From assembly GCF_006345805.1 (NCBI RefSeq), contig NC_043014.1:36580001-36644000 (forward strand): a stretch of 64,000 nucleotides of DNA. Reading direction: 5' to 3'. Of this stretch, positions 39,046 through 60,527 are shown one piece after another. Both the position numbers and the translations under genes were made by a program. Source of the stretch: Octopus sinensis. Taxonomy: Eukaryota. Position 1 is the first letter of the stretch. Every line of letters starts with the position of its first letter. The notes under the pieces are model-generated. The model was not told the DNA's origin and did not search any database. It saw nothing but the letters and a program-made list of their open reading frames with translations.

Positions 39046-39094
39046 GGGCTGAATTGTAAGGAACCATCATCAACATTAATATAACTAATAACAT
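39046..39094 (-). CDS. Signal-peptide exon (paralogue B)
   Basis: MLLVILMLMMVPYNSA + C|GTAAGT. The phase-1 end joins in frame to V exon 35821 (CTT GTT GAA). Confidence 0.8.
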
Positions 39095-39899
39095 CCCTGA
39101 TCTTAACAGGTAGGTATTAGGCAGAAAGGGAAATGATCGTCGGCTCTCAGCAAAAGAAAACAACGAAAAGACGTGTCTCACTCGAAAAGTGAAGTCGAAA
39201 TAGTCAAGCAAACACAGAGACAAAAACTCAATATATGTAAGTGTGACTGAGAGATGGAGTGCAATTCGAAGTGTGAGTGAAGCTGAGATTGTTCCATTTC
39301 CTGTTTCTTTCTGATTGTTTCTGTCTGTCAGTCTCTCCCAGGCTCACTTTCTCTCTCTCCCTCTCTCCTCTCTCTCCCTCTCCCCCTTTCTCTCTCTCAT
39401 TCTGATTTATCGTTCTCTTTCTGTTTCGAGAAGTAGACAGGTAAAATACATTAAGAAACACAGTTTCAAAGAATAAAAGAACGAGAAACACAGGCGCGCC
39501 AACACACGGAACACGCGCTGCAAGCACACACACTCGGACACACACACACACACACACATACACACACACACATGCACACACAAACACACCACAGAGCAGA
39601 GAGTGAATTTCAGCATACTGAGAGAATGAGTGAGGGGCAAAGTAAATTGATTAGGAAAGAGACGGCGACCAAGAATACGTAAGAGGGAAGAGAGGGAAAA
39701 ATAAAGACGTGAACGTGAGAAAATCGGCAAGGTTGTGATGGAATGAAAGAATATAACAAACACCAAGAGGACATCAAAGAGTGAACGAGAGGGAGAGAGA
39801 AAGAGACAGACAGAATGAAAAGATAGTATGGTGTAAGGGGCACATTTTCCTTATTTGTTGAAATATCTTAAAATTTTTCCTTATTGACTTCAGCAGGCT

Positions 39900-40300
39900 A
39901 CTGCAAAGAGCCCCGGTAGCAGAGGCTAAACTTATATAAACGAAAGCTGTATTTATCTGGCCCCTTTCTCTTCGAATTCCATGACATTCTTCCTAAGATT
40001 GTCTTAATAGGTTGCTGCTCTTCTTCACTAAATCCTTTGTACTGCATTCCCAGTTCCCGCAACAATTGTATTTGGCAACCTAGAAGATTTTGTTGCATAA
40101 ATTTCTTGGGGTTACCTAACATCGATGAAGCTGCACCTGGCAAATCTATAGGCAACATTTGAGTGCTGTGATTGCTGTCATTCGACTATCAGCCACATCT
40201 TTAGCTGTTGTCTGTCCCATCCTGCATACATTGAGTTCAAACTGCTGCCACTCATTGTAGATATATGGTGGACGAATTTTATCTGCTGAACTACTCTGCA
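39900..40300 (-). mobile_element. Hero-like LINE relic
   Basis: EWQQFELNVCRMGQTTAKDVADSRM and ELGMQYKGFSEEEQQP. Confidence 0.7.
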
Positions 40301-40789
40301 TTGGGTTGGGTGTGCAAGCACATTAAGGGAATCGGCACAGTGAGCTTTTTTTCAGTATGTGACCTCGTGAAGACTACTTGCATTTTTTTCCCTCTGTCCT
40401 CCCACCTCGGGATCTTTCTTCCTCCTATGTTTCCGACGAAGAGGTCCGCTCGAAACGTCATACCCTCCTTCTTCCCTTCTTTCCTGAGCGTCCAATAATA
40501 CTTTATTTGTTCCACATCCTCGCGTTGTTGTCTTTTTGTTTTCTTGCTTGGATTAACTTTATATATATAATATATATATATATATATTATATATATATAT
40601 AGTGTGTGTGTGTGTGTATGTGTGGTGTTGCGCTTGCGCAGAAGGTGGAAAAGACGGTGAGTGTGAAAAGGCGAAAAAGCAGATTCTACCGTCATTTCGT
40701 CGTGTGTATGTTATGTATTAGTTATGAAGATAGCCAGATGATTTTAAGTTTGTGAAAGAGCGTGTAGCACAGCAGGCCCTTTGAAAATA

Positions 40790-43750
40790 CTAATAGAAAA
40801 GTTGTTGCAAATATTTTCCTCAAACTCAACGAACAACATATCTCGGTTTTTACCGTTAGAGGTCTTCATCTCGTATGTCTGCATTTCTGGGTGTCAGAAG
40901 TTTTATAGATGTTATATTTCACTGAATCGCTACCGAGAGCCTGGTCTTATGCAGCACTGATCAGGCTTTCTGTGGTTACACTTCAAATCACCTTGCCCAA
41001 AACATGCCCTCGATGCTGTATTATCCTTAATGTCCTGTGCATTCGTTTCAAACCATCCATGTATTCTCATTTCAAGAAGGTCTTCTTTTCTCTTCTCCTC
41101 GGCTCTTTGGTTAAACACTTTCTTGCCCATCACTTCATCTGCATTTACACCCATATTTTTCGCGGCATATTTCAGCAGATCTTCATCACTATTTATCAAA
41201 TACTCGGCAAGCGTTCTCCTTTCACTCCTTATAGAATGGTCTATACTAATTAGTCCTCTGCTACCATTCTTTTTTTCTTTTCATATACAGTCTGTTTACA
41301 TTTGCTTTAATTTGTAGCGCCCCATGCAGCGTCATCAACTTTCTCGTACTTCTATCCAGTGTTGATATTTCATCTTTAGTCCATTTGAGAAGGGCGCACT
41401 ATATCTGACCTCCGCAACTGCCCAGATATTCATTGCAGTAATCAAATTTTTGGCATTTATGTTGGATTTCAACACAATATTCACTCTTTTTTATATGCTT
41501 CGCTAATCCAAAGTTTCATTCTCCGTGTAGAATATTATCCAGCTCCAACATCTTTAAATATCTATACCCACTACCGTTCACCCATGGTCTCTCCTGATGG
41601 TAGCCGCAATCCTCTGAAGGCTACTTTCGTCTCTCTTTTCATATTAAATACTCAGCGTTTGGTAATCCCACATTCCATATCGATGTCCCTACCACACTTC
41701 TGCACTTTTTTGGTTAAGGAATCTATCTGTTTTTCAGATTTCCCAAACAATTTCAAACGATGGTTCAAAAGATCGTTAATCCACCTTAACTTCCCTAAGT
41801 GTCATTGTTATAGGTATTAGTGCAATTACAAAAAGTAACGAAGAAAACGAGTCACCTTGGAAGATTCCCCTTTTAATATTAACTTCTCTAAGGAATATAT
41901 TACTTGAGTACAATTTAGTTTTCTACTCTTTCATGCTATGCATCAGAAAGTTTGTGATGTTGTCAACAACACCAAACATCTGCAGGCATTCAACGATCCA
42001 AGAATAAGGCATCATATACGCACTCTTAAAGTCAATCCAAGCCATAGACATGTTTGTATGATGTTTTACAAGGCCTCAAAACTGTTTTATAGATGACCCG
42101 ATGATCCTTGGCACCCTGAGAACTCTTCCTACATCTTTTTTGTTCCCTTGGATTGGTAGTATTTCTTCCAGTGCCAGGAAATTGTATGTCTTTGCCGCAC
42201 ATATTTTAGTTAGTATTTTCCAGATTATGTTTAGGCATGCTTTCTTCTATCTTTCATTACAAGTTCTGTTCCCCCAGTCACCATCCACGCGGAGATCGTA
42301 CCTTTCTGGACACACTCATTCACATGGGCTGTTAGACTTTCATGCACCGCGTGGCCTCTCTTCAGCCAGAAGCCATGAATCCTATCTGGTCCTGGGGCTT
42401 TCCAGTTAGGTACTTTACCCACTTGTTCTTTCACATCACCTGTGCTTATTCCTTTGTTGCTTTCCCCATTGTAATTCTATCTTGATAGCCCCTATCCACA
42501 TTGCATCCCTTTTATGCACCCAATTTGTTTCCCCATCATCTGCTCCAGTACTCCTTGGCTTGATTTCCATCAGGAGCAACTTTTTCCCCCATAGTGTCCT
42601 TCTAACGTTCTGAAGAATTGCTTCGGGTTATTTTTGAATAATCTGTTCTCGAACTGCTTATTTCTGTTCACAAATCTTCTGAGCTTCTGGCTTTTTGCCA
42701 TGATCCTTTGTTTTAATTGCTCTGTTACTGCATCAAACCAGTTCTTTTGTATTTTATATTTCTTCTCTAATCTTTCTCAGTCGGTTTTTGTCCTATTTTC
42801 CCAGTTTCCTCTTAACTATTGCTCAGTTTTTCCTAGATCTTGCCTTGCCCGCATTATCTCCCTTCCAATGTGTCGTTTCCACCATTTTTTGTTCTCTTAA
42901 GTTGCAACTTCTCCTCAACAAGTAGCCCAATAGCTCGGAGAAGATTCCTTGTTTGTGTTATGTCCTCTGTCTGGATGAATATTCTGACAGTATTTATCTT
43001 TCGTGTTACGTTATTTATCATATTTCTATCTACCCTTCTCATATTCATAAAGAATTTTTCTCCTGGAGCATTCATCAAGTCGGTGAATTGTCTTTGAATT
43101 TCAAGCAACTCATTATCTAATTGGTTCTTTTCCCCTTCATGTCCACCCACCACAGTATCAGGATTTAATGTATAGCGTTCCTGTTCTTCATTCCTAACAG
43201 CCCCATCACCCTTCCCCTGTTCGTCCTGTCTACTCTTCTCCTTGCTTTCAACTCTTACTTCTCTGTTTTCATCTCCGACCATCCTTTGTAGCCCATCGGC
43301 AAGGTCTCTCAGACTCTCACTAATCCGAGATATTTCTTCTCCAGTTAAGTAATCCTTCCTCCTAATCACTCTCACTAGGTTCATTAGTTTGTTTTCTGAC
43401 ATAGGGCACATATCTTTTTCCATCCAAAATTACAAGGTACCTCGGCCTACTCCACGACTTCTTTCCAGCTTTGCTCTTTCATGACATTCATAAGTGTATC
43501 GTACTCTTCCTTTGTCCACTTATGTCTGTTTATGCGCACACCGAGTATTTGATCTGTTGCGACATAACGACCGTCCGAGACCAGATCACTGCCCCTGATG
43601 CGGGCACTTTCGGACGTACCGGGCCTGAAACCTTGACCATGATCGGCTATAGCTTCATTCTCGCCGTTAATTCTTTCCTTGTGTTGCAACATGATTTCAT
43701 GAGTCGTTGGTGGGTTTCCCACAAGAGTTGTTATTGAGATACCGTCCCTC
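40790..43750 (-). mobile_element. R4/Dong-clade non-LTR retrotransposon, long and degenerate
   Basis: N-terminal SENKLMNLVRVIRRKDYLTGEEI, then NWKAPGPDRIHGFWLK, RT remnants, EMRIHGWF and a CCHC remnant. Confidence 0.85.
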
Positions 43751-44386
43751 TCTTCCTCTCTTTATTTGTATATACATGCGCACATGTATATACATACACA
43801 TATATAAATAACGCGCTTGAAGTATGTCACCTCCATAACCACAGTGATTATCATTACCACGATCGTTCTATCTGTAGCATTTAAAATTATCAATAATAAT
43901 ATGGGTCCCGGTATATTGCAACAGATCTTCGTCACTATTTATCAAATACTCGGCAAGCATTCTCCTTTCACTCTTTATACAATGGTCTTTACTAAGCAGT
44001 CCTCTACCACCTTTCTTTTCATATACAGTCTGTTTACGTTTGAGGTTAACACTTAATACTATGTTTGCCCTCCCTGCATAAATTGTATTTGCCGAACAAT
44101 TCTTCTGTGCCGATGAAGAGAAATAGCCCAGCAATCGCGATACACAGATATTGTTTTGAGCTGAGTGGGGATGCTAGATTCCCTTGTTCGAAAATATAAG
44201 AACACAGATCGTGCCATATAGTCAGCAGGAGACGATGTCTCCTGGGGCTAAATTACAGTAACATTAGTCCTAAACTAGGACTACCATGTTATGTTGGCAA
44301 ACAATCTTTACTACAAAGTACTGTTGCTGAATATCTCACGTTGTGAGATTTAAAAATAGTAATTTTCTAATTATCAACTTGCTTTA

Positions 44387-44960
44387 AGGCGGCGAGCTGG
44401 CAGAAACGTTAGCACGCCGGGCGAAATGCTTAGCGGTATTTCATCCTTTCGGGGTCAATAAATTAAGTACCAGTTACGCACTGGGATCGATCTAATCGAC
44501 TTAATCCCTTTGTCTGTCCTTGTTGGTCCCCTCTATGTTTAGCCCCTAGTGGGCAATAACGAAATAAGAATCGTTAGCACGTCGGGCGAAAAGCTTAGCG
44601 GTATATTTCGTTTGCTGTTAGGTTTTGAGTTCGAATTCCGCCGAGGTCGACTTTGCCTTTCAACCTTTCGGGGTCGGTTAAATAAGTACCAGTTACGCAC
44701 CGGGGTCGATATAATCGACTTAATCCGTTTGTCTGTCCTTGTTTGTCCCCTCTGTGTTTAGCCCCTTGTGGATAGTAAAGAAATAGGTATTTCATCTGTC
44801 TTTACGTTCTGAGTTCAACTTCCGCCGAAGTCGATTTTGCCTTTCATCCTTTCGCGGGCAATAAATTAAGTACCAGTAGCAAGCTAAGGTCGATCTAATC
44901 GACTGACCCCTTCACCCAAAATTTCGGGCCTTCTGCCTAGAATAGAAAAGAAAAGAATAT
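44387..44960 (+). mobile_element. Tandem SINE array (same family as 2832-3440)
   Basis: AAGGCGGCGAGCTGGCAGAAACGTTAGCACGCCGGGCGAAATG head followed by repeated bodies. Confidence 0.85.
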
Positions 44961-45135: not shown

Positions 45136-45235
45136 NNNNNNNNNNNNNNNNNNNNNNNNNNNNNNNNNNNNNNNNNNNNNNNNNNNNNNNNNNNNNNNNN
45201 NNNNNNNNNNNNNNNNNNNNNNNNNNNNNNNNNNN
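45136..45235. other. Assembly gap (100 N)
   Basis: Run of 100 N. Confidence 1.
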
Positions 45236-45697
45236 GTATATTGACTAACGTATACATTTCCACAAATCTCAACGATTTGGCCAGCTGATATCAGTTTTGG
45301 CACAAACTTGGCAGATATGCATCTCATACCCAAATATTCAGTGATAATGGACTGAACTGAACCATAATTAATCTGCACATCCTCTGATAACTCACGAATG
45401 GGGACTCGACGATTTCCCCTCACGGCTCATACACTCCTCTCCATACACTTTCTGCAACTTTGCGTTGGCCTCTGAGCATGTATCGCCATGGCTACGTTCT
45501 CTTTCATGGTCAATTCGACGATCACACGTTTTTAACCACCTTCATTCTAAACACTGTTGTAAACAGCGGAAGTGAGCTAGAACGTTAAAATATAGTGCGC
45601 ATGCTCAACAAAAGTCAATCTTTGCTAAGAGGTTTGACTCTGCGTGCTTTAGCTTCGTTACTACAACAACAGTCTGGATACCACTGATCAGACCTCG

Positions 45698-45700
<3 letters not shown>
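45236..45700 (-). mobile_element. Mariner 5' fragment
   Basis: NRRVPIRELSEDVQINYGSVQSIITEYLGMRCISAKFVPKL; end ...GATCAGACCTCGTA. Confidence 0.8.
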
Positions 45701-45733
<33 letters not shown>

Positions 45734-46379
45734 TACATTTATGTGTATGTGTTTGTGTGTGTACATATTTATCTATACATATACATATACATGTATATCT
45801 ATGTGTGTGTGTGTGTGTGTGGTGTGTGTGTGAGTGTGTGAGTGCATATATTTGTTTCCTTTATTTCAGCATGTCATAATTGTATTTTTAAGCAACTGAA
45901 ATCAGTAGCAAATTTTGATAGAAATTTAAGCACTTTCTTTCTTTTAGCCATGATGGAGTGTTCTAAGTATTTTCATCCTGTTGATCCCTGTTCTTACATA
46001 TAAATTTACTCGTGTGAAACCCCTTTGCCTTTTCAGTATTATCTAATACTAGCAAACGTACCCATCCTTTCACAGTTTAAGTTGCATTTATGCCCATGAC
46101 ACCTGATTGAGACTAGAGGTGAATAATCTCGCGTGTCCATAACTTTCAGGTGTTCTAACACCCGATGCTTTGAGAGAGTATTCTTCACCGCGCCAGGTTT
46201 CAGGCAGCCGGAAAATGTATGAGTTTTCTTGCATGCGGTAAGATTCCCAGGATGTCAAAAGAAAGTATACTATCCCATGTTCATAAAGCGGGGAGCAGAA
46301 CAGAAGCTAGAAGTTTCAGGCCTATCTCTCTGACGTCACATATTAGCAAGTTTATGGAACGCATTGACTGAAGGGGGCT

Positions 46380-48400
46380 AATCACGTTCTTTAAAGAAAG
46401 TAACTTGCTCACACGCAACACACGACAGAGCTTCCGTCGGGGGAGAAGCTACGTCTCACAGCTACTACACAGATTAGACCCTCTGTTTCCGCTTTTAAAT
46501 CACTTTCAGTCATCCACAGCCATCTTTTTTCTCTGTATGTCTTATCTTTACCGTCTTTAAGAAATTGACCATGCATTCTTTTCTTTACCCACCTATTTTC
46601 AGTTTCATTCGTTTTCAATTTCTTGTATAGTGCTTTATCTTTGCAATCTTTGATCCTACACAAGCCTGACTTTCTTACTTCTAATAATAGCGGCTATGTT
46701 GCTTTTTCTGCTCTAATTGTGTGTTCGCATCCAATAAATCCCCTTCCCCTTCTTTTTCTTGTTACATACTGTCTGTCTGTGTCACTTTTTGTGTGTAGTG
46801 ACCCATATCTAGTGAGCAACTTTCTCAATTTCTGACCAAGCTGTTTAGTTCGTCTACTGTCCATGCGATTACTCCTGCTCTATATCTAAGGAGTGAAACC
46901 ACCCAGGTGTTGATATATTAGATCTTATTCCGTCCGTTTAATTTCGACTTAAGGATCCGTCATTTGTTTCTCCATCAATTTATCCATTGCTAAAATCCAT
47001 AAGTACGTATAGCCCGTCTCTTCTACCTGCTTCATAATCACCCCCTCGACGGTATCGTTAGACCGTACATAGATTTGATTTTTCCTCTCTTCAAGACTAT
47101 CACACCACACTTTCTCAGTCCGAACACTATTCTGATATCAGTACTGAAAGCATACACCGTATCAACGATGGAATGACTTGGGCTTCATCATCACCATAAA
47201 TTTTGAGGTCAGTCATGAATAACAAATGGCTGACTTTTTGTTGGCGGATTTTGAATACATGCCCAGCTTTTGCTTTCCTCACAATTAGTGTTAGTGGTAT
47301 CAAGCAAAGTACAAAGATCAGGGGGACACTTCCCAAGCTAACCTATCATATCCCTCGACATTTCTTTTTTCCTTATCGCATATCTTGTTGTCAGCTCAGC
47401 ATGCTATTTTTATGATACAACATCGTTATTTTCTCTTTCTCAATTAACATTATGTCTGGATTCCTATTTTCTATGACATGGTCACACTGAATCATAGAAA
47501 CCCATAGGATCATTGCATTATCATTTTCGATGATGCCTTCGGTTTTATGTATTGCTCTTTCAAGTCCATGCTTGTTGCAAAGTGTCCAATGAACAATCCT
47601 TGCTATATAGTCATGACGTCTCATATTTTTTCTGGGCTAGTGGCGTACATATGCCATACAGTTTTACCGTTCTTTACACAGATTCTGCATTGATCATTTT
47701 CTGATGTGCTGTCTATTCTGTATTTGATGTAATTCGTTTTTAGGGCTTGCTCTTGGGCAGCACAGATTAGAGCCTCCGTTTCCGGTTTTAAATCACTTTC
47801 ATTTATTCATAGCCACCTTTTCTCTCCGTCTATCTTATCTTCAACATCTCTATGTAATTGTTAATGCATTCTGTTCTTTATCTACCTATTTTCAGTTTCA
47901 TTCATTCTGAAGTTCTTCTACAGTGCTTTACAGTGCCTCCATCCTACACATGCCTCACCTTCTTACTTCCAATGATAAATAGCATGGAAGCAAAAAACAT
48001 GTACAGTCGGTTTGCAACAGATACGAACTTCAAGACAGATATTGAAGAACGGTGGTAATCGATACGGAGAAGTGACTGGAAGATAGAGACATTAGTTAAT
48101 TATATCCCTGCCAGGGTCTGTACATTGCCTTTTTCTACGTTCATTATACCATATTTCTTGAGCCTGAATTCCATCTCAATGTCAACTCTAAAACAGTAGA
48201 CCATGTTCACCAAAGAACTCACTTGTGCCTCATCCTTGCCATGTAGCTCCAAATCATCCATGAAGAGGTAGTGGTTGATTCCTTCAGATTTTCTCTTTAA
48301 CTGATATACCAGGTTCATTTTCCTCAGCACCAAAACCAAAGGTATCATAGAAAGAGTAAAATACAATGGAGATAAGATCTATCCTCAGAACGTCCGTCCT
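46380..48400 (-). mobile_element. Scrambled R4/Dong LINE fragments
   Basis: KRMHGQF, LKPETEALICAAQEQAL, RRHDYIARIVHW, NHYLFMDDL. Confidence 0.85.
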
Positions 48401-48419: not shown

Positions 48420-48740
48420 CATCAGGTAGGAGAAGAAGACGGGGCACAGTGCGTCCAGCAGTGGTCAATAAGTCCGGTGCGTAGTTGGAAATCTTAGCTG
48501 CAGGTTCGGCACTTTGAGATGGAAAACTTTGAGTGTGTCCTTGAAGTACTTTTTCTGTTCACCTTGCGTGTGCTTACCTTCCAGCAGTTCACTGTTGAAC
48601 AGTCTCTTGAGGAGAAGCATGTCAAACATTCGAAAAAGTGGTCTGTTTACCTGTCTTGCGCTCTCCTCAGAAGTATGTAAATGCTTGGCAGAGCAGCTCG
48701 AGAGAAGACCTCCGTGTCTGGCATGTTGTCTTGCCAGGTG
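48420..48740 (-). mobile_element. RTE LINE C-terminal fragment
   Basis: KRLFNSELLEGKHTQGEQKKYFKDTLK. Confidence 0.75.
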
Positions 48741-49192
48741 ATTTTGCAAAAGCTTTCTCAGGTAATTCATATACATTCATTCTTGGTTTATTAAAATTAT
48801 CTCTGCCTCTAAAGGATGTCATGTATGTATGTATGTATGTATGTATGTATGTATGTATGCATGTATGTATGTATGTATGTATGTATGCATGTATGCATGT
48901 ATGTATGTTTGGATCCAAAACTTCTGAACACTGTCGCGTAACACTGATCTAAAACGATGAATCCGTTAATATGTAAAGTCAAAAATATTCTACGTTCGAA
49001 ATGGACGTGTTGAACGCTTCTTGAGCGAAAGAAATATGAATTAGAAAAAAAAAAGAGAAGTCGACTTTAATATTTCTATATTTACTCTTCTATACGTATT
49101 GACTACATATTTCTATCTCATTTGAATTACTACTCGCAAACAACATAGCACGCACGCATACATACACAAGCACATACTATTCATATATGTAT

Positions 49193-49245
<53 letters not shown>

Positions 49246-50597: not shown

Positions 50598-51020
50598 CCA
50601 TACATACATACTTACATACATACATACATACATACATGCATACATACATACATACGTACATGCATACGTACATACATACATACATACATACCCACATACA
50701 TAGATACGTACATACGTATTATATATGCATTATGTTTGCATGTACGTACCTATGTATGTATGTATGTATGTATGTATGTATGTATGTATGTATGCATGTA
50801 TGCATGCATGCATGTATGTATGTATGTCTGTATGTATGTATGTATGTATGTATGTATGTATGTATGTATGTAGAGGTATGCTAATGCAAAGAGGAAAAAA
50901 GGAACTCAAAATATGATTTTGCAAAAGCTTTCTCAGGTAATTCATATACATACATTCTTGGTTTATTAAAATTATCTCTGCCTCTAAAGGATGTCATATG
51001 TATGTATGTATGTATCTATG

Positions 51021-51054
<34 letters not shown>

Positions 51055-51517
51055 TGTATGTATGTATGTATGTATGCATATATGTATTTATGTATGTATG
51101 TATGCATGTATGTATGTTTGGATCCAAAACTTCAGAACACTCCGTCGCGTAACACTGATCTAAAACGATGAATCCGTTAATATGTAAAGTCAAAAATAGT
51201 CTACGTTCAAAATGAACGTGATGAACGCTACTTGAGCAAAAGGAATATGAATAAGAAAAAAAAAGAAGTCAATTTTAATAACTCTATATTTACTCTTCTA
51301 TACGTATTGACTACATATTTCTATCTCATTTGAATTACTACTCGCAAACAACATAGCACGCGCGCATACATACACAAGCACCTACTATTCATATATATAT
51401 ATATATATTCTGTTGTGTCTGAGGAGAGTCATTCTCTTTTAGTGCCTTATTATTTAACAGAATATACTTCAACACACGAACTCATATAAAGAATCTTGCA
51501 AACCAAATCCAGAAACG

Positions 51518-51584
<67 letters not shown>

Positions 51585-51980
51585 ATATATACATACATAT
51601 ATATCCATACATGCATACATACATACTTACATACATACATACGTACATACATACATGCCCGCATACATAGATACGTACATACGTATTATGTATGTATTAT
51701 GTTTGTATGTATGTATGCATGAATGTATGTATGTATGTATGTATGTATGTATGTATGTATGTATGTATGTATGTATGCATGCATGTATGTATGTATGTAT
51801 GTATGTAGGGGTATACTAATGCAAGCAGGAAAAATAGAACTCAAAATATGAGTATCTGTGTAGGGGGAGATAGAACAATATAGTAAGCACAGGCACTCAA
51901 TGAATGTAAGTATGAGATCTAAAAAAGAACGATGCAATGTTGGAGCTGAAAAGAAAATGTTTTCTTGAATCATAATTTTT

Positions 51981-52029
51981 GGGCCGAATTGTAAGGAACC
52001 ATAATCAATATCAATATAACTAATAACAT
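51981..52029 (-). pseudogene. Leader-exon copy with lost donor
   Basis: MLLVILILIMVPYNSA followed by AAAAAT instead of GTAAGT. Confidence 0.7.
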
Positions 52030-52353
52030 CCATGATCTTAACAGGTAGGTATTAGGCAGAAAGGGAAATGATCTTCGACTCCCAGCAACACAAAATTGTA
52101 CTTAGTAACCCAGAAGATTTTGCTGCATAATTTCTTGGGGTTACCTAACATCGATGAAGCTGCACCTGGCAAATCCTCAGGCAACATTTGAGAGCTGTGA
52201 TTGCTGTCATTCGACTATCAGCCACGTCTTTAGCTGTTGTCTGACTCATGCGGCATAAATTGAGTTCAAACTACTGCCACTCGTTTCAGATGCTTACTGG
52301 ACGTATTTCATCTGCTGAACTACTCTGCATTGAGTTGGGTGCATGTGCACTGA

Positions 52354-52422
<69 letters not shown>

Positions 52423-53297
52423 TGGTTGTGAAAGAGCGAAAGAGCAGATTCTACCGTCATTTTGTCGTGTATATGTAAAGTATCAGTTAATATGATAGCC
52501 AGATGATTTTAAGTGGCGAAGGGTGGGTAGTACAGCCAGGCTATTTGAAAATACTAATAGCAGAAAGTTGTTGCAAATATTTTCCACAAACTCAACGAAC
52601 GACATATCTTAGGTTTACCTATTAGAGGTCTTCATCTCATATGTGAGTTCTCTTCGCCACGGTTTAGTACCTGCGCACTCGGTCACCAAACCAGAAATTT
52701 CTAAGTATCATGCATATATGCATATATAGAGATATGTGTGTGTGTGTGTCTGTATGCATGTATATATATGTATAAATATATATATAGATATATATAGATA
52801 TATTTATGTGTGTGTATGTGTGTGTGTGAAATATAACTTTCTTGAAAAGCACAACAATGCAGAGTTGACTATAGTAAATGCGATAATTTGACTATTCATA
52901 GTCTCTTATATTTCGAAATATAAAACGTTCTTCTTCACATATTGCTGAGAATTGATCGAGTCACAGCTATAATCGGTTTTCCAACGGTTACTGATACTTT
53001 GTTTTTGGAAGCGTCTCTGCAGTTGTCTCTCGAAGCTGCTTCCAGTCTCCTTATGAGATTTGTATGTGGGCGGCCATGTTTAGAGTTCGTGGTGTTAGCA
53101 TATCCGTAGCGCTGCTTCTAAGTTATGCATTATACGCGCAGTTTTTTTTTTATATATATATATATAATACATGAGCATACTAAAAGAAATGGATATACAT
53201 ACATCCACATGTAGCTAAATAATATATTGATTGCATGGGTTGGGTGTACAAGCAATTTAGGGAATCGGCACAGTGGGCTACAATATACTATATATGT

Positions 53298-53351
<54 letters not shown>

Positions 53352-53498
53352 AAGAAAATGCGAGTGTAAAAGGGCAATTAGGGCGAGATAGAAATATATA
53401 GTAAGCACAGGCACCCAAAGAATGTAAGTATGAGATCTAACACAGAAAGAATGAGTGTTGGAGCTGAAAAGAAAATACTGTCGTGAATCTTAACTTAC

Positions 53499-53547
53499 GG
53501 GCTGAATTGTAAGGAACCATCGTCAATATTAATATAACTAATAACAT
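53499..53547 (-). CDS. Signal-peptide exon (paralogue A)
   Basis: MLLVILILTMVPYNSA + C|GTAAGT. Confidence 0.72.
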
Positions 53548-53953
53548 CCCTGATCTTAACAGGTAGGTATTAGGCAGAAAGTAAAATGATCTCCGGCTTC
53601 CAGCAACACAATAAAACGAAAAGACGTGTCTGACTCGAAAATGAAGTCGAAATAGTCAAACAACAAAAACAGAGACAAAAAACTCAATATATGTAAGTGT
53701 GAATGAGAGATGGAGTGCAATTCGAAGTGTGAGTGAAGCTGAGATTGTTCCATTTTCTGTTTCATTCTCCTTCTGTCTGTCTGTCTCTCTCTTTCTCTCT
53801 CTATCTCTCTCTCTCTTTCTCTCTCTCCCTTATCCCTCTCTTTCTACTTCGAGAAGTAGACAGGTATATATAAAACAAAAAACAGATGAGAACAATTTAG
53901 AACAAGACACACACGCGCGCCTACACACACACGCTCACGCAACACGCGCGCCG

Positions 53954-53990
<37 letters not shown>

Positions 53991-54329
53991 CAAAAACACA
54001 CACACACCACAGAGCAGAGTGTGAATTTCAGCTTACTGTGTGAATGAGTGAGAAGAAAAGTAAAGTGATTAGGAAAGAGACGGCGACTAAGAACACGTGA
54101 GCGGGAAGAGAGGGAAAAACAAAGACGTGAACGTGAGAAAATCAACAAAGAAGTGATAGGATGAAAGAATATAACAAACACCAAGAGGAAAAGAGAGAGC
54201 GAACGACAGGGAGAGAGAGAGAGAGAGGAAGAGACAGACTGATAGTATGATTTAAGCGGCACATTTTCTTTATGTGTTGAGATATCTTAATATATTTCCT
54301 TATTGGCTTTCAAAGAGCCTCGGAAGCAG

Positions 54330-54780
54330 AGGCTAAACGTTCTGCCTTAACAACGTCCTGAATTTTCTTCATGCTCAATTGCTTCATGTAAAACTCGGTC
54401 GTTGGTGATGTCAGGTTTATGAGGTTTATATCTTGTCCATACTCCTTTTTTTTTTTTTTGCAGGGTCACCCAGGAAGTCGAGAATAAAATGTATTCCCTC
54501 CACCCACCGAGCATTCGAGAAAGCCACTTCACGAGTAGCTTTTTGGTAGAGCCAAATAAGTCAGAAACGAAAGCTGTACTTCTCTGACTCCTTTCTCTTC
54601 GAATTCCATGACATTCTTCCTAAGAATGTCTTAATAGGTTGCTGTTCCTCATCACTGGATCCTTTGTACTGCATTCCCAGTTCCTGCAACTGTTGTATTT
54701 GGTAACCCAGAAGATTTTGTTGCATAATTTCGTGGAGTTACCTAACATCGATGAAGCTTCACCTGGAAAATCAATATGCA
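54330..54780 (-). mobile_element. Hero-like LINE relic
   Basis: Aligns with 3440-3800 and 39900-40150. Confidence 0.65.
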
Positions 54781-54799: not shown

Positions 54800-56830
54800 G
54801 CAACACCCTAGTAGGATACCTTCTTGGCTAGTTAATGGTTTGGCATTCTGCTTCCAAAAAGTGAAGAAACAAATGAACCAAAAAACTATAGACCCATAAC
54901 CTGCTTAACAACTATGTATAAAAGGCTAACATCTGCCCTGACTGAATACACCAATAGTGTTTTAATAGAAAGCAGCATATTCCCTAATTATAGTTGTAAA
55001 GATCAGCTACTCATCAATAAAATGATCTTAGAAGATTGTCACAAACGACGCAAAAACTTGTCAATAGCCAAGATAGACTATAAAAAAGCTTTTGATAGCC
55101 TACAACATAGCTGGATTAAGAAATGCCTGGAAATGTATAAAATAGCGCCTACACTGCGAAACTTTTTGTCTGTAAGTATGAGATCATGGAGAACCACACT
55201 AACTTTGAACAGTGACAATGAATCTCTAAATGCTGGTGATGTAAAAACTTAATGTGGCATTTCCCAGGGTGATTCACTATCACCACTCCTCTTTTGTTTA
55301 GCCTTAATACCTTTCTCAAAATTGCTCAATGATGCACAGTACAGTACGGTTATAAAAGTTTGATAAAAATATAAACCATCTCATTTACATGGATGATTTA
55401 AAGCTCTTTGCAAAAAATGACCAACAACTCAAGGGCTTATTAGCAATTGTTAAACAATTCAGTGATGACATCAGAATGCAATTTGGCCTCGATTAATGTA
55501 CAAAAGCTACCTTTATCAAAGGAAAATGACAGAAACATCTAACGTTAACCGTGACCAGCAGAATGTCATCAAAGAGTTAGACCAAGCAGAGAGCTACAAG
55601 TACCTAGGAGTAATTGAAGGGGACGGAATAAGGCATTCAGTGATGAAAGAAAGGATCAGGAGAGATTGTTATCGCAGAGTAAGAGCAATACTCAAGACAG
55701 AGCTGAATGCGAGAAACAGGATCGAAGCGATCAATGTTTTGGCCATACCAGTCGTGACTTACAGTTTCAATATCGTTAACTGATCAATTACTGAAATATA
55801 TCAGCTCGACAGGAAAATAAGAAAACTGTTGACAATGCATAGAATGCACCACCCTAAGGCAGATACAGAACGACTTTATCTGCCAAGAAAAGAGGGAGGC
55901 CGTGAACTTTTACAACTGACAATAACAATGAAGATTGCTACAATTGGCCTAGACACCTACCTGAAAAACTCTGAGGACGATGTTAAAATTTTTCTCAAAA
56001 CATGAAAACAAGAAAGCATCATACTCAGTAACAAAACAGGCAAAGGAATATCTAAGTGAATTCCGAATACAACAAATTTCGGAATTAGACATACAAGACA
56101 CAAACGCAGCAAAAGCTAAGAGCATGAAAAACCGTGCTAAAACTGCCGCCTTAGATATTCTGATTGATAAATGGCAAGAAAAACCTCTCAATGGCAAATA
56201 CCCAAAGAGATCGAATAATGCCGATGTTGACAAAGCCCTCACCCATCAATGGCTAATGGCCTCTGGCTTAAAATCTGAAACAGAAGGGTTTATCATAGAA
56301 GGAACTACCAGGCCAACATATTAAACAACGGCAGTAGCCCAACATGTCGTGTATGCCGACAACAAAATGAAACCATTGACCATGTTGTCTCCAAATGCAG
56401 TCTTCTAGCGCCTACAGAGTACCTCAGTAGGCATGATAGAGCTGCACAATATATTCACTGGGTAATTTGCAAAAACCTGGATTTGCCCCATGAAAAAAAC
56501 TGGTGGGAACACAATCCACCTCCTGTGTTTGAAAATGACCACATCTCACTCCTCTGGAACTTCACCATTCAAACTGACAGGAAGATAGATGCAAATAGGC
56601 CAGACATTATATTGAAAGACTTCAGACAAAGAACATGCCTCCTCATTGATATGACTGTCCCAATCGATATAAACATATCTGTCAAGACCTACCAAAAACT
56701 GAGCAAATATAAAGATCTTGAAATAGAAATCAGAAAAATGTGGAACCTGAAGACTAAAACAATACCTGTTGTCATAGGTGCCCTGGGAATGATAGCAAAA
56801 GAGGCTGATGCTGCATTTTTAAAGAACAAT
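54800..56830 (+). mobile_element. R4/Dong-clade LINE, RT + CCHC + RLE, frameshifted
   Basis: NYRPITCL, IDYKKAFDS, GIxQGDSLSPLLF, YMDDLKL, YKYLG, CRVC..ETIDHVVSKC, NRPDIILKD...LIDMTVP, IPVVIGALG. Confidence 0.95.
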
Positions 56831-57069
56831 GTTTAAGAGAAGCAGAGGATCGGCGGGCGCTTTCTGCCTTCTCCCATCTTTATCATTTTGGGATCATTCG
56901 CCTCATTAATGTCTATGTCCAGCCCGCAAAGCTACCCATCTTTGTGCTGCCTCTACGGCAAATGAAATGAAATAAGTTTAGCCTCTCCTACCGGGTTTCT
57001 TTGCAGTAGCCTACTGAAGCCAATAAGGGAAAATATTAAGATATTTCAACAAATACTTCATACTATCAG

Positions 57070-57448
57070 TGGAGGCGCAATGGCCCAGTGGTTAGGGCAG
57101 CGGACTCGCGGTCATAGGATCGCGGTTTCGATTCCCATACCGGGCGTTGTGAGTGTTTATTGAGCGAAAACACCTAAAGCTCCACGAGGCTCCGGCAGGG
57201 GATGGTGGTGATCCCTGCTGTACTCTTTCACCACAACTGTCTCTCACTCTTACTTCCTGTTTCTGTTGTACCTGTATTTCAAAGGGCCGGCCTTGTCACT
57301 CTGTGTGTCACGCTGAATCTCCCCGGGAACTGCGTTAAGGGTGCACGTGTCTGTGGAGTGCTCAGCCACTTACACGTTAATTTCACGAGCAGGCTGTTCC
57401 GTTGATTCGGATCAACCGGAACCCTCATCGTCGTAACCGACGGAGTGC
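57070..57448 (+). mobile_element. tRNA-derived SINE
   Basis: GGAGGCGCAATGGCCCAGTGGTTAGGGCAG...GTTTCGATTCCC; matches 12003-12389. Confidence 0.85.
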
Positions 57449-57487
57449 TTCAGAACATACTATCATTGCATTCTGTCTGCCTGTCTC

Positions 57488-57541
<54 letters not shown>

Positions 57542-57738
57542 CGAACTCTCTTTTTTCCTCTTGGTGTAAGTTATATTCTTTCATTCTATCACTTCTTTGT
57601 CAATTTTCTCATGTTCACATCTTTACTTCTCGCTCTTCCTTCTCTCGTATTCTTAGTCGCCGTCTTTTCCCTAATCACTTTACTTTTCCCCTCACTCATT
57701 CATTCACTCACTGTGCTGAAATTCACTCTCTGCTCTGT

Positions 57739-57789
<51 letters not shown>

Positions 57790-58241
57790 GTGTATGTGTG
57801 TGTGCCATCGCGCGTGTTGCGTGAGCGTGTGTGTGTAGGCGCGCATGTGTATCTTGTTCTAAGCCTCTTTCAATCTGTTTTTTGTTTTATATATATATAT
57901 ATTCTACCTGTCTACACCTCGAAGCAAAAAGAGGGGGATAAGAGAGAGAGAGAGACAGAGACAGAGAGGGAGAGAGAGGAAGAGATAGAGAGACAAAGAA
58001 AGAGAGAGACAGAAACAAGGAGAATGAAACAGAAAATGGAACAATCTCAGCTTCACTCACACTTCGAATTACACTCCTTCTCTCATTCACACTTACATAT
58101 ATTGAGTTTTTGTCTCTGTTTTTGTTGTTTGACTATTTCGACTTCACTTTTCGAGTCAGACACGTCTTTTCGTTTTATTGAGTTGCTGGGAGCCGAAGAT
58201 CATTTCACTTTCTGTCTAATACCTACCTGTTAAGATCAGGG

Positions 58242-58290
58242 ATGTTATTAGTTATATTAATATTGATGATGGTTCCTTACAATTCAGCCC
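58242..58290 (+). CDS. Signal-peptide exon, inverted copy, intact
   Basis: MLLVILILMMVPYNSA + C|GTAAGT on the plus strand; no plus-strand V exon seen in the window. Confidence 0.6.
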
Positions 58291-58441
58291 GTAAGTTAAG
58301 ATTCACGACAGTATTTTCTTTTCAGCTCCAACACTCAATCTTTCTCTGTTAGATCTCATACTTACATTCTTTGGGTGCCTGTGCCTACTATATTTTTCAA
58401 TCTCCCCTAATTACCCTTCTTTACTCGTATTTTCTTCTGCA

Positions 58442-58500
<59 letters not shown>

Positions 58501-59028
58501 ATACACACACATACACACACACATATAGTATACTGTAGCCCACTGTGCCGATTCCCTAAATTGCTTGTACACCCAACCCATGCAAACAATATATTATTTA
58601 GCTACATGTGGATGTATGTATATCCATTTCTTTTAGTATGCTCATGTATTATATATATACATAAAAAAACTGCACGTATAATGCATAACTTAGAAGCTTC
58701 GCCGCGGATATCCTAACACCACGAGCTCTAAACATGGCTGCCCTTCACGTAATTCTCATGAGGAATTCCCGAACGAGCTTCGAGAGATCACTGCAGAGAC
58801 GCTCCCGAAAACAAATTGTCAGTAACCGGTGGAAAACCGATTATAGCTGTGACTGTCACTCGATCAATTCTCAGCAATATCTGAAGTAGGAATTTTTATA
58901 TTTCGAAATATTATAAAAGACTATGAATAATTGAATTATAGCATTGTTGTGCCTTTCAAGGACGTTATATTTCATAAATGTATATATACACATATATATA
59001 TATATATATATATGAATGTATATATATG

Positions 59029-59118
<90 letters not shown>

Positions 59119-60478
59119 TGTGTGTGTATGTATTAATGTCAGGTTACTTTCGAGTGCTACTGGTAACATGTAACCCAATACAACCTGTTGCATGGTCGGG
59201 TCGTCGGCGACTAAGCTGGCAACCCCACCAAGCTTGCTTGGTGAGGAGGGTGTTTATTGGACACCCTGCAGGATGAAAAACACAACTCGTCAAATGGCAG
59301 AGAAACTCTTGAGAGTCAACGGCCATCCAATAAATGTCTTAAGGCTGTATCATGCGCGGGGACATAGAAATAATCGGACTGAATACCCGATCGCGCGGTT
59401 AAACCATTGGGAGTGAAGGACTCCTAGCCTTTGTTAGGGCATCCTTCTAAGAGAAGGTAACTCAGGTAACTGGGATAACTCCGATATAAAACCTGCGGTT
59501 CAGTGGTTACCGATGATGTTGACTTGTTCTTCTTTTCGGATTATGGCTGCTGTTGCTTAGTGAGTGGGATTGACTCAGTGCACAGCCTTTCCTCACTTAA
59601 AAAAAATCTTCTTGCACGGGCATTGCACGATAATAACATTGATTAAGCTTCGTGCAATGGCCATACTCGATAACGAGGGGGCAATTACCATGTATTAATG
59701 TATGTATGTATATATATACACACACACACACACACACGCACACCTCTCTCTATATATATACATATATGCTGGAGTACTGAGAAATTTCTGGTGTGGTGAC
59801 CGAGTGCGCAGGTAGATTACCAGGGTAAGTTGAAATCTAAACCGTGGCGAAGAGAACTGACGTACGAGATGAAGACCTCAAATAGAAAAACCTGAGATAT
59901 GTCGTTAGTTGCATCATTGGAAAATATTTGCAACAACTTTCTGCTATTGGTATTTTCAAATAGCCTGGCTGTACTACACACTCTTCGCCACTTAAAATCA
60001 TCTGGCTATCATCTTAACTGATACTTTACATATACACGATGAAATGACGGTAGAATATGCTTTTTTGCTCTTTCACTCTCACCGATCCTGTCCCCTGCGC
60101 TCGCGTACACAAACACAATGCATACATATTGTAGCCCCCTTTGCCGATTCCCTTAATGTGCTTGTACATCCAACTCAATGCAGAATAGTTCAGCAGATAA
60201 AATTCGTCCACCTAGCATCTGAAACGAGTGGCAGTAGTTTGAACTCAATTTATGCCGTATGAGTCAGACAACAGCTAAAGATGTGGCTGATAGTCGTATG
60301 ACAGCAATGACAGCGCCCAATGTTGCTTATAGATTTGCCAGGTGCAGCTTCATCGATGTTAGGTAACCCCAAGAAATTATGAAACAAAATCTTCTGGGTT
60401 ACCAAGTACAATTTTGTGTTGCTGGGAGTCGAAGATCATTTCCCTTTCTGCCTAATACCTTACCTGTTAAGATCAGGG

Positions 60479-60527
60479 ATGTTATTAGTTATATTAATAT
60501 TGATTATGGTTCCTTACAATTCAGCCA
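60479..60527 (+). pseudogene. Leader-exon copy with lost donor (inverted)
   Basis: MLLVILILIMVPYNSA followed by ATAAAT; mirror of 51981-52029. Confidence 0.7.

What the first reader, a model, noticed from the sequence alone, without database searches (positions are those of the whole stretch)
39046..60527. Six copies of a promoter + signal-peptide exon module, four with live donors
Leaders at 1946(-), 39046(-), 53499(-) and 58242(+) end in GTAAGT; 51981(-) and 60479(+) have lost the GT. All encode 16 aa with conservative swaps (I/M/T) and synonymous changes (TTA/TTG, TCA/TCG). Leaders outnumber visible V exons 6:2. Every phase-1 leader could splice to either phase-1 V exon, so alternative first-exon or V-exon choice is possible (inference).
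Basis: partly seen in the sequence, partly recalled or inferred. Interest (0 to 1): 0.72.

Follow-up and report, generated by a model that had tools for sequence, protein, structure and literature searches.

The report
Duplicated first exons, octopus Ig-like cluster
The six repeated signal-peptide exons are real, but they are leftover copies of the front end of genes in a duplication-prone, octopus-only cluster of two-domain Ig-like surface proteins, not a system for mixing leaders with V exons.

Summary
The window has exactly six copies of a 49-nt, phase-1, 16-aa signal-peptide exon. Four keep a GTAAGT donor; two have lost it. The window is Octopus sinensis chromosome CM016876.1:36,580,001-36,644,000. 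It lies inside a tandem cluster of an octopus-only, uncharacterised gene family built as leader, V-like Ig domain, second Ig domain, short exons and a hydrophobic (GPI-like) tail.

The 6:2 excess of leaders over V exons has ordinary causes:
- Leader 1946(-) is exon 1 of the next gene, LOC118766815. Its V exon lies about 13 kb beyond the left edge of the window.
- Leader 39046(-) pairs with the V exon at 35504-35821.
- Leaders 53499(-) and 51981(-) belong to one unit, a full module followed by a decayed tandem twin. The homology of that unit to its paralogues stops at the assembly gap, where its V exon would be expected.
- Leaders 58242(+) and 60479(+) are an inverted copy of that same 5' fragment. 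No co-oriented V exon follows within 37 kb.

Only 39046 and 53499 are upstream of, and co-oriented with, the two V exons. All available gene models pair each leader with the nearest V exon. Combinatorial leader-V splicing is therefore unsupported, though not excluded for 53499 to V35.

The parts
39046..39094 (-). Leader exon (coding part), MLLVILMLMMVPYNSA, phase 1, GTAAGT donor. Exon 1 of the gene that carries the V exon at 35504-35821. The full module (upstream region, 5'UTR, leader, start of intron 1) spans 38523-39931.
   Evidence: The peptide is identical to the leaders of O. sinensis XP_036366492 and O. bimaculoides LOC106880707.
35504..35821 (-). V-like Ig exon 'V35': 318 nt, phase 1-1, AG acceptor and GTGAGT donor, 3.2 kb downstream of leader 39046.
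   Evidence: It is 93.5% and 88% identical to two V exons inside O. vulgaris CAI9737736. The family's conserved cysteines are present.
32104..32402 (-). Second Ig-domain exon of the V35 gene, broken. It is 299 nt where 303 are expected, with two frame shifts and in-frame stops relative to XP_036366492.
   Evidence: sequence; tblastn splits into two frames at about 32289/32290, 58-62% identity.
29725..29763 (-). 39-nt phase 1-1 mini-exon encoding (G)ELRPAIEGKANA. In the O. vulgaris model it is spliced directly after the V35-like exons.
22247..22326 (-). Terminal coding exon, DKLNGADIITKILAFAAILLFMGNLH*, a hydrophobic GPI-signal-like tail with a phase-1 acceptor.
   Evidence: It matches the C-termini of family members P0003, P0005, P0007, P0029 and P0039.
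13045..13368 (-). V-like Ig exon 'V13': 324 nt, phase 1-1, intact. It is an isolated relic, with no leader between it and 22247 and no second Ig exon downstream.
   Evidence: It is 72% identical to the V domain of O. bimaculoides LOC106880715 X1. Only 12605-13449 is orthologous to that gene.
1946..1994 (-). Leader exon MLLAMMMLMIAPYTSA, GTAAGT donor, diverged module at 1881-2499. It is exon 1 of LOC118766815, whose V exon lies about 13.1 kb further on, outside the window.
   Evidence: O. vulgaris CAI9737735 carries the identical leader joined to the V exon found in L003 at 9893-10219. The phase base T plus TT gives the observed Phe.
53499..53547 (-). Leader exon MLLVILILTMVPYNSA with GTAAGT donor and a full module at 52762-54338. 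No V exon of its own is assembled.
51981..52029 (-). Dead leader copy MLLVILILIMVPYNSA. Homology starts only 65 nt before the ATG, so the upstream region and most of the 5'UTR are missing. The donor is mutated to AAAAAT. The truncated module spans 51734-52093 and lies inside intron 1 of the 53499 unit.
58242..58290 (+). Leader exon MLLVILILMMVPYNSA with GTAAGT donor and a full module at 57505-59039. It is the inverted duplicate of the 53499 module and has no co-oriented V exon downstream.
   Evidence: (I1, I4).
60479..60527 (+). Dead leader copy MLLVILILIMVPYNSA, donor ATAAAT, truncated module at 60414-60758. It is the inverted duplicate of the 51981 copy.
   Evidence: (I10, I17).
51734..54338 (-). 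Left arm of the inverted segmental duplication: full module, X/Z and Y pieces, truncated module.
   Evidence: 52762-54238 matches 59039-57505 at 83.8%, and 51861-52789 matches 60647-59690 at 84.5%.
57505..61939 (+). Right arm of the inverted duplication. It stays collinear with intron 1 of the neighbouring gene (L001 9532-13184) as far as 61939.
54836..56836 (+). LINE-type retrotransposon remnant (reverse-transcriptase ORFs) filling the spacer between the two inverted arms.
   Evidence: (RVT_1, E=5.5e-7).
62372..62847 (-). Seventh, leaderless module fragment. Only the first ~500 nt of intron 1 remain. Upstream, the module homology gives way to another repeat, 62838-63029, which also occurs at 716-919.
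45136..45235 (.). Assembly gap of 100 N. The right flank is intron-1-type sequence that lies 0.8-1.2 kb upstream of the V exon in paralogues. The left flank is intergenic-type sequence found upstream of leader modules.
45250..46892 (-). Intron-1 block of the 53499 unit, collinear with 36663-38060 of the 39046 unit and with L001 17022-17836.
   Evidence: (94% and 90.5% identity).

Best explanation
The six modules are copies of exon 1 (a 5'UTR of at least about 210 nt, a 16-aa signal peptide and a phase-1 donor) of one octopus-specific gene family. The family is arranged in a tandem cluster on O. sinensis chromosome CM016876.1. Each normal gene has one leader, one V-like Ig exon, one second Ig exon, short linker exons and a hydrophobic tail exon. 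All internal exons are phase 1-1.

The surplus of leaders arose by nested segmental duplication of gene 5' ends.
1. An old tandem duplication of the segment [upstream region + exon 1 + start of intron 1] placed a second leader inside intron 1. That inner copy lost its upstream part and its donor (51981 and 60479). In the neighbouring gene it was deleted altogether.
2. A later inverted duplication copied at least 4.4 kb of this 5' fragment head-to-head, so that 51.7-54.3 kb matches 57.5-61.9 kb. A LINE now lies between the arms. This step produced 58242(+) and 60479(+), which point away from any V exon.
3. Leader 1946 belongs to the next gene, off the window.
4. Leader 39046 is the working partner of V35.
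5. The 53499 unit has lost its gene body, or that body is hidden by the assembly gap.
6. V13 is a stranded V exon from a decayed unit.

Shown: the copies, their states, the duplication map, the organism and family, and the pairing of 1946 and of the neighbouring leader with their own V exons.
Inferred: the order of events, that the plus-strand copies are non-productive, and that the gap hides a V exon rather than marking a deletion.
For: Copies and donor states.

Duplication map:
- Self-BLAST and the repeat finder (I1-I17) show one inverted duplication that pairs 53499 with 58242 and 51981 with 60479.
- The alignment shows that homology of the two dead copies begins only at -65.
- The dead copies share +1 G>A and +5 G>A in the donor, so the donor was lost before the inversion.

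Organism and family:
- L001 positions 31462-36671 equal window 64000-58791 at 100% identity.
- A profile search returned 36 representative proteins. All 20 whose names were looked up are Octopus proteins or unnamed Logan sequences.

One-to-one pairing of leader and V exon:
- LOC118766816 has one leader, one V exon and one second Ig exon.
- O. bimaculoides locus L002 has compact tandem genes, with a leader directly upstream of each of the two V exons in the 27.6 kb and no orphan leaders.
- O. vulgaris CAI9737735 joins a leader identical to window 1946 to the V exon found in L003. L003 itself holds no leader.

The gap:
- The right flank, 45250-46892, is collinear with the intron-1 sequence that ends 0.8-1.2 kb before the V exon in two paralogous units.
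- The left flank matches sequence found upstream of leader modules.
- O. vulgaris CAI9737736 contains two V35-like exons where the O. sinensis assembly shows one. Its gene model spans 106 kb, against about 77 kb for the same end points here.

No further family exons were found anywhere else in the window.
Against: - The two orphan full copies keep consensus donors. Their -240 to +49 core is significantly less diverged than their flanks: 11/268 mismatches against 72/644 in the intron and 78/424 in the distal upstream region. That could mean they are still used.
- The dead, donor-less pair shows the same pattern: 4/104 mismatches against 114/745. Gene conversion therefore explains the pattern at least as well as use does.
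- No transcript data could be consulted.
- The intron from 53499 to V35 would be 17.7 kb. This is comparable to the 9-13 kb first introns of the neighbouring genes, so use of 53499 as a distal first exon is not excluded.
- I could not scan the whole genome for further copies.
- I could not read the O. vulgaris DNA, because the gene range was too long for the tool.
Confidence: 0.78

Rival explanations
1. Alternative first exons and promoters are in use. Leader 53499(-), and possibly leaders further upstream, act as distal alternative first exons spliced to V35. Leader 39046 or 53499 can skip on to V13, because all exons are phase 1. The result would be regulatory or V-domain diversity from one locus, which is the first reader's idea restricted to the two leaders that are geometrically able.
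For: - 53499 and 39046 are upstream of and co-oriented with both V exons. Both have intact GTAAGT donors and a full upstream region.
- All internal exons are phase 1-1.
- RefSeq predicts exon-skipping and alternative-first-exon isoforms in the O. bimaculoides family members (P0005 against P0039, and P0038 against P0039).
- The core of the orphan copies is better conserved than their flanks.
Against: - The leaders encode near-identical cleaved signal peptides, so no protein diversity would result.
- Reaching V13 would need skipping of a complete downstream gene body, including its terminal exon at 22247-22326.
- All inspected gene models pair a leader with the nearest V exon.
- The dead copies show the same raised conservation.
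- The gap and the extra O. vulgaris V35-like exon suggest that 53499 had, or still has, its own V exon.
Confidence: 0.12
2. Assembly artefact: the extra leader copies are uncollapsed haplotypes or misjoined contigs around the gap, not real paralogues.
For: - A scaffold gap lies in the middle of the array, and the paralogy breaks exactly there.
- The window's V35 looks like a mosaic of the two O. vulgaris V35-like exons.
- The second Ig exon carries frame shifts at homopolymer-like runs, which could be sequencing errors.
Against: - The copies differ by 9-16% outside the core and by many indels and transposon insertions. That is far more than allelic divergence.
- The arms are inverted and separated by a LINE.
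- The same X/Y/module architecture is seen in the independently located neighbouring gene.
Confidence: 0.05
3. The module is part of a mobile or dispersed repeat that happens to carry a leader-like ORF and is scattered genome-wide, unlinked to Ig genes.
For: - The copies sit among transposon fragments: mariner, LINE and a 184-bp repeat.
- A whole-genome scan was not possible with these tools.
Against: - The same leader and its 5'UTR are the annotated N-termini of many family proteins in three Octopus species.
- In the four loci read, about 150 kb in all, every copy lies inside the Ig-like cluster, in the expected position upstream of a V exon or as a fragment of such a unit.
- The module has no terminal repeats and no transposase association of its own.
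Confidence: 0.03

Closest known systems
Octopus 'uncharacterized protein' family: O. sinensis LOC118766816 (XP_036366492) and LOC118766815; O. bimaculoides LOC106880707, LOC106880713, LOC106880714 and LOC106880715; O. vulgaris CAI9737731 to CAI9737738
   Same: - The 16-aa leader of 39046 is identical to that of XP_036366492 and LOC106880707. The 1946 leader is identical to that of CAI9737735.
- The exon order is the same, with phase 1-1 internal exons.
- V35 and V13 align along their whole length and carry the conserved cysteines.
- The window is physically inside this cluster.
   Different: - The orphan and truncated leader copies, the broken second Ig exon and the stranded V13 exon are not part of any annotated model.
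- The O. sinensis RefSeq model of LOC118766815 lacks the 1946 leader.
Partial (5'-end) gene duplicates and pseudo-exons in tandemly duplicated receptor clusters, for example vertebrate KIR/LILR or butyrophilin-type Ig receptor clusters (comparison from general knowledge)
   Same: - A rapidly evolving tandem cluster of small Ig-domain surface proteins.
- Segmental and inverted duplications, transposon insertions, gene fragments and pseudogenes.
- The predicted fold is most similar to IgV-IgC ectodomains such as butyrophilins.
   Different: - There is no detectable sequence homology to vertebrate families: no Pfam hit, and the best PDB sequence match has E=0.04.
- The family is restricted to octopods in the database searched.
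Variable-first-exon gene clusters such as clustered protocadherins and UGT1A (comparison from general knowledge)
   Same: Several first exons, each with its own upstream region and donor, lie upstream of shared downstream exons. This applies to 53499 and 39046 relative to V35.
   Different: - In those clusters the first exons encode the variable part of the protein and are all co-oriented.
- Here the first exons encode an almost invariant signal peptide. Two of the six are inverted, two lack donors, and no shared constant region is demonstrated.

Membership tests
Octopus leader / V-like / Ig2 / tail family (LOC118766816-like) | 16-aa hydrophobic leader (MLL...P/SY.SA) on its own exon, ending in phase 1 | tested here: met
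   (six copies). The peptides are identical to the annotated N-termini.
Octopus leader / V-like / Ig2 / tail family (LOC118766816-like) | V-like domain exon of about 106-108 codons, phase 1-1, with the invariant Cys, F.C, C.D..Y.C and SKPK motifs | tested here: met
   (the invariant columns include both window exons). The profile search gave E-values down to 1e-90.
Octopus leader / V-like / Ig2 / tail family (LOC118766816-like) | Intact second Ig-domain exon following the V exon | tested here: not met
   For the V35 gene this exon (32104-32402) has two frame shifts and stops. For V13 no such exon exists in the window. Skipping it would keep the frame, as in O. bimaculoides isoform P0005.
Octopus leader / V-like / Ig2 / tail family (LOC118766816-like) | Hydrophobic C-terminal tail exon (ADKL..ANIITKIL.FA..L...GNL.) | tested here: met
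   Window 22247-22326.
Immunoglobulin superfamily (Ig fold) | Significant match to a curated Ig-domain sequence model | tested here: not met
   No Pfam family for the window exons or for five family proteins. The best PDB sequence-profile match is FcγRII at E=0.04.
Immunoglobulin superfamily (Ig fold) | Two beta-sandwich domains superposable on solved Ig domains | tested here: met
   The AlphaFold2 model of XP_036366492 has pLDDT 85-92 over residues 20-225. Foldseek against PDB gives butyrophilin, VCAM-1 and Fab chains at probability 1.00, E about 1e-4 and TM 0.44-0.55. This rests on a predicted structure only.
Rearranging antigen-receptor V gene segments | Short leader intron, and a V exon that ends in a recombination signal (heptamer, spacer, nonamer) rather than a splice donor | tested here: not met
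   The leader introns are 3.2-13 kb. Both V exons end in ordinary phase-1 GT donors (G|GTGAGT and G|GTAAGT), with no CACAGTG in the sequence read after them.
Variable-first-exon clusters (protocadherin / UGT1A type) | Co-oriented first exons, each encoding a variable protein part, all spliced to shared constant exons | tested here: not met
   Two of the six copies are inverted, two lack donors, and the leaders are near-identical. Actual splicing could not be tested here.

The most novel reading that the evidence does not exclude
The donor-competent orphan modules may still be active. Leader 53499 would serve as a distal alternative promoter and first exon for the V35 gene. The inverted 58242(+) copy would drive antisense transcription towards the 3' end of LOC118766816. 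Together they would give promoter-choice or antisense control over which member of an octopus-specific, butyrophilin-like Ig receptor cluster is expressed. The unusually conserved -65 to +49 segment would be the element under selection. That segment is retained even in dead copies and is recognisable in the distant transmembrane branch of the family.
Probability: 0.1. Interest if true: 0.6.

Novelty: new member of a known kind. Interest (0 to 1): 0.25.

Why it matters
The array of leaders looked like a possible invertebrate system for combinatorial leader-V joining. It turns out to be the debris of segmental duplication in a fast-evolving gene cluster.

Three practical results follow:
- The 1946 leader is the missing first exon of the O. 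sinensis gene LOC118766815.
- The gap at 45136-45235 probably hides, or marks the loss of, a whole gene body.
- An uncharacterised, octopus-only family of two-Ig-domain surface proteins is delimited, with GPI-like and transmembrane branches. It could be worth studying as a candidate recognition-receptor family.

Tried and rejected
- Word-indexed homologue search with the V35 exon found nothing. The exhaustive profile search was needed.
- Exact-sequence look-ups of two window ORFs, a mariner-like one and a transposon-like one, were not on record, so they did not identify the organism.
- AlphaFold2 on the V exon with only two sequences was too poor to use (pLDDT 56). It was repeated with the family alignment.
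- The O. vulgaris locus of CAI9737736 could not be fetched because the gene range of 106 kb is too long. P0041 and P0043 are not on record.
- The second word-indexed search with a family alignment returned only 9 proteins and missed some of its own input sequences. I did not rely on it for counts.
- Three literature searches, by gene identifiers and by topic, found nothing on this family.
- I first took the raised conservation of the core in the orphan pair as a sign of selection. I rejected that reading as decisive once the dead pair showed the same pattern.
- I looked for a leader for V13 between 13368 and 32104 with the nhmmer profile and a peptide-pattern scan. None was found.
- I considered haplotig duplication and rejected it because the copies differ by 9-16%.
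Full report
**1. The observation**

The leader at 39046-39094(-) reads ATG TTA TTA GTT ATA TTA ATG TTG ATG ATG GTT CCT TAC AAT TCA GCC C|GTAAGT. A 49-nt pattern search with up to 3 mismatches finds four copies, where none is expected by chance. An nhmmer profile built from -65 to +12 around the exon finds exactly six copies in the window, with E-values of 1e-34 to 1e-41. Nothing else scores below E=1.

One search lists the six copies side by side:

| Copy | Peptide | Sequence after the exon |
|---|---|---|
| 1946(-) | MLLAMMMLMIAPYTSA | gtaagt |
| 39046(-) | MLLVILMLMMVPYNSA | gtaagt |
| 53499(-) | MLLVILILTMVPYNSA | gtaagt |
| 58242(+) | MLLVILILMMVPYNSA | gtaagt |
| 51981(-) | MLLVILILIMVPYNSA | aaaaat |
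| 60479(+) | MLLVILILIMVPYNSA | ataaat |

All six are 16 codons plus one base, so they end in phase 1.

**2. The gap (tested first, as requested)**

The N run is exactly 100 bases, at 45136-45235. It lies in no leader and no V exon. The ORF listed through it is an artefact of reading through N.

The two flanks are not neighbours in the paralogy map.
- Right flank. 45250-45448 and 45802-46892 are collinear with 36663-36861 and 36942-38060 of the 39046 unit, and with L001 17022-17836. In those units this block ends 0.8-1.2 kb upstream of the V exon.
- Left flank. 44384-45135 matches sequence that lies upstream of leader modules (L001 2296-3509 and 7950-8003; window 2830-3439).

The gap therefore sits exactly where the rest of intron 1 and the V, second Ig and tail exons of the 53499 unit would be. 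Continuity across the gap cannot be assumed.

**3. What the exons belong to**

Two phase 1-1 exons, at 35504-35821(-) and 13045-13368(-), encode 39%-identical domains. Both begin (L)VEM and end SKPK(L/I)L. Pfam sees nothing and the word-indexed search found nothing.

An exhaustive profile search found 36 representative proteins. The 20 whose names I looked up are Octopus sinensis, O. vulgaris or O. bimaculoides proteins, labelled 'uncharacterized' or 'Ig-like domain-containing', plus unnamed Logan sequences.

O. sinensis XP_036366492 (LOC118766816) starts with MLLVILMLMMVPYNSA, identical to the 39046 leader. Its locus, L001, overlaps the window: L001 31462-36671 equals window 64000-58791 at 100% identity. 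The window is therefore CM016876.1:36,580,001-36,644,000, and LOC118766816 lies just to its right on the minus strand.

The family plan is as follows:
- a leader;
- a V-like domain with five conserved cysteines;
- a second Ig domain;
- short linker exons;
- a hydrophobic tail.

An AlphaFold2 model of XP_036366492 built with the family alignment is confident over residues 20-225 (pLDDT 85-92). It resembles two-Ig ectodomains such as butyrophilins, VCAM-1 and Fab chains (Foldseek probability 1.00, E about 1e-4, TM 0.44-0.55). Sequence models of Ig domains do not reach significance. 'Ig-like' is thus supported at the level of the predicted fold only. Three literature searches found nothing on the family.

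**4. Gene content of the window (minus strand, read from high to low coordinates)**

- Leader 39046, then a 3.2-kb intron, then V35.
- A second Ig exon at 32104-32402. It is broken: 299 nt instead of 303, with two frame shifts and stops.
- A 39-nt phase 1-1 mini-exon, (G)ELRPAIEGKANA, at 29725-29763.
- A tail exon at 22247-22326.

Every internal exon is phase 1-1, so skipping the broken exon keeps the frame. O. bimaculoides has a predicted isoform that skips this exon (P0005 against P0039). The O. vulgaris model CAI9737736 joins the V35-like exons directly to ELRPAIEGKANA. The V35 gene may therefore still encode a single-Ig, GPI-type protein. This is inference.

V13 follows further down. Only 12605-13449 is orthologous to its O. 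bimaculoides counterpart (87-92% nucleotide identity). It has no leader upstream and no second Ig exon downstream. It is a stranded exon.

**5. Where each leader belongs**

*Leader 1946(-).* O. vulgaris CAI9737735 reads ...MLLAMMMLMIAPYTSA-FFEIEY... Its V, second Ig and tail exons are found at 97% identity in L003, the O. sinensis stretch that begins 1.25 kb to the left of the window. L003 contains no leader. The last base of the exon, T, joined to TT gives the observed Phe. So 1946 is exon 1 of LOC118766815, with an intron of about 13.1 kb. The RefSeq model of that gene (P0014) starts inside the V exon and misses this leader.

*Leader 39046(-).* This is the partner of V35.

*Leaders 53499(-) and 51981(-).* These form one unit, a full module followed 1.5 kb later by a truncated one. 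The homology of the truncated copy to the others starts only 65 nt before the ATG, and its donor is dead. The pieces between the two copies (X/Z at 52417-52749 and Y at 52094-52341) are the same pieces that lie upstream of the 39046 module (40652-40879 and 40064-40346). They also lie in intron 1 of LOC118766816 (L001 11712-12503). This is the signature of an old tandem duplication of the segment [upstream region + exon 1 + start of intron 1].

*Leaders 58242(+) and 60479(+).* These are the mirror image of that unit. 52762-54238 matches 59039-57505, and 51861-52789 matches 60647-59690, at about 84% identity. A LINE remnant lies in the spacer. The plus-strand arm stays collinear with intron 1 of the neighbouring gene up to 61939. 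Both dead copies share the +1 and +5 G>A donor changes, so the donor was lost before the inversion. Downstream of 58242(+) there is no co-oriented family exon in the rest of the window or in the following 31.4 kb.

*A seventh fragment.* 62372-62847(-) keeps only the start of intron 1. Upstream of it, the module homology gives way to another repeat.

**6. The 6:2 ratio and the splicing inference**

Of the four donor-competent leaders, only 39046 and 53499 lie upstream of V35 and V13 on the same strand. Leader 1946 lies 3' of both V exons, and 58242 is on the other strand. The statement that every leader could splice to either V exon is therefore wrong for half of them.

The excess of leaders has three causes: a window edge (1946), partial duplications (51981, 58242, 60479), and a missing gene body at the gap (53499).

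O. vulgaris supports the last point. CAI9737736 contains two V35-like exons, 88% and 93.5% identical to the window's single V35. Its model spans 106 kb, against about 77 kb between the same end points here. I could not read the O. vulgaris DNA.

In every locus I could read, each leader is paired with the nearest downstream V exon:
- L001: one leader, one V exon, one second Ig exon.
- O. bimaculoides L002: a leader directly upstream of each of the two V exons in 27.6 kb, with no orphan leaders.
- L003 together with leader 1946.

**7. Are the orphan copies alive?**

The -240 to +49 core is better conserved than its flanks in all pairs of full copies. For the orphan pair 53499/58242 the mismatch counts are 11/268 in the core, 72/644 in the intron and 78/424 in the distal upstream region (p = 6e-4 and 9e-9).

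The promoter-less, donor-less pair shows the same contrast: 4/104 against 114/745 (p = 7e-4). Selection on a spliceable coding exon cannot explain that. Gene conversion among modules is the more economical reading. A DNA- or RNA-level role of the -65 to -1 segment cannot be excluded.

That segment is in frame with the leader. Its translation (VAGSRRSF..LP) is recognisable even in the distant transmembrane branch of the family.

**8. Verdict**

The identity of the module as the signal-peptide first exon of Ig-like genes is supported. The combinatorial leader-V reading is not supported.

The feature is an ordinary product of nested tandem and inverted segmental duplication in a lineage-specific gene cluster. 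Its interest is modest. The gene family itself is uncharacterised and may deserve attention.

Noticed in passing
Family proteins P0043, P0044 and P0025 (O. sinensis / O. vulgaris LOC115221679), same chromosome: A distant branch of the family has the same two Ig-like domains, plus a transmembrane helix and a cytoplasmic tail with tyrosine motifs (for example LHYAEL, which is ITIM-like by eye). The cluster in the window has GPI-like tails instead. GPI and transmembrane versions of one ectodomain recall paired immune-type receptors.
   Followed up: partly
window 1946-1994 and L003 9893-10219: The O. sinensis RefSeq model of LOC118766815 (XP_036366491, 185 aa) starts inside the V exon. Its real first exon is very probably the 1946 leader in this window, as in O. 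vulgaris CAI9737735.
   Followed up: yes
window 32104-32402 (-): The second Ig exon of the V35 gene has two frame-shifting length differences (net -4 nt) and in-frame stops relative to its 62%-identical paralogue. One lies next to a T5 run (GCCTTTTTGGATTGA). It is either a pseudo-exon or an assembly error. Skipping the exon keeps the reading frame.
   Followed up: partly
window 35504-35821 compared with O. vulgaris CAI9737736 residues 273-381 and 392-500: The window's V35 is a mosaic of the two O. vulgaris V35-like exons. Its ends match copy b and its centre (KDQKITIAKFIHNKENGVFEKTTEEKDFNC) matches copy a. This suggests gene conversion, or a collapsed assembly of two paralogues.
   Followed up: no
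window, 65 nt upstream of each leader ATG (for example 58177-58241): The last ~65 nt of the 5'UTR are in frame with the leader, nearly invariant among copies, and retained in the dead copies. In distant family members this stretch is annotated as coding, from an upstream ATG (MSCSYIIVAGGSRRPFLL..., MMSCGYITVAEGTWGSSRL...). It may be an ancestral long N-terminal region or a conserved regulatory element.
   Followed up: partly
window 2830-3439 and 44384-44904; L001 2296-3509; O. bimaculoides L002 8338-8569 and 12503-12744: A repeat with a 184-bp period, present as two or three tandem units, recurs upstream of the gene units. It is 85-93% conserved between O. sinensis and O. bimaculoides. It is either a repeat family or a conserved intergenic element.
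   Followed up: no
window 13758-15311: An almost perfect (99%) tandem duplication of a ~785-bp unit lies just upstream of the stranded V13 exon, where its leader would be expected.
   Followed up: no
window 49368-50455 (+); 54836-56836 (+); 42854-43722 (-): A mariner-type transposase ORF (Pfam Transposase_1, E=8e-24) is flanked by an 88%-identical repeat pair (48739-49197 and 50914-51405). There is also a LINE reverse-transcriptase remnant, and further long ORFs (42854-43722) that look transposon-derived. Together with abundant (CA)n and (CATA)n microsatellites, these fill most of the space between the family exons.
   Followed up: partly
O. vulgaris proteins P0001 (1202 aa), P0002 (726 aa), P0003 and P0037: Several O. 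vulgaris predicted proteins string together 2-5 V or V-Ig2 units. They are probably fusions of neighbouring tandem genes, made possible by the uniform phase 1-1 exons. One of them ends in a transposon-derived exon that maps to window 6488-6709.
   Followed up: partly
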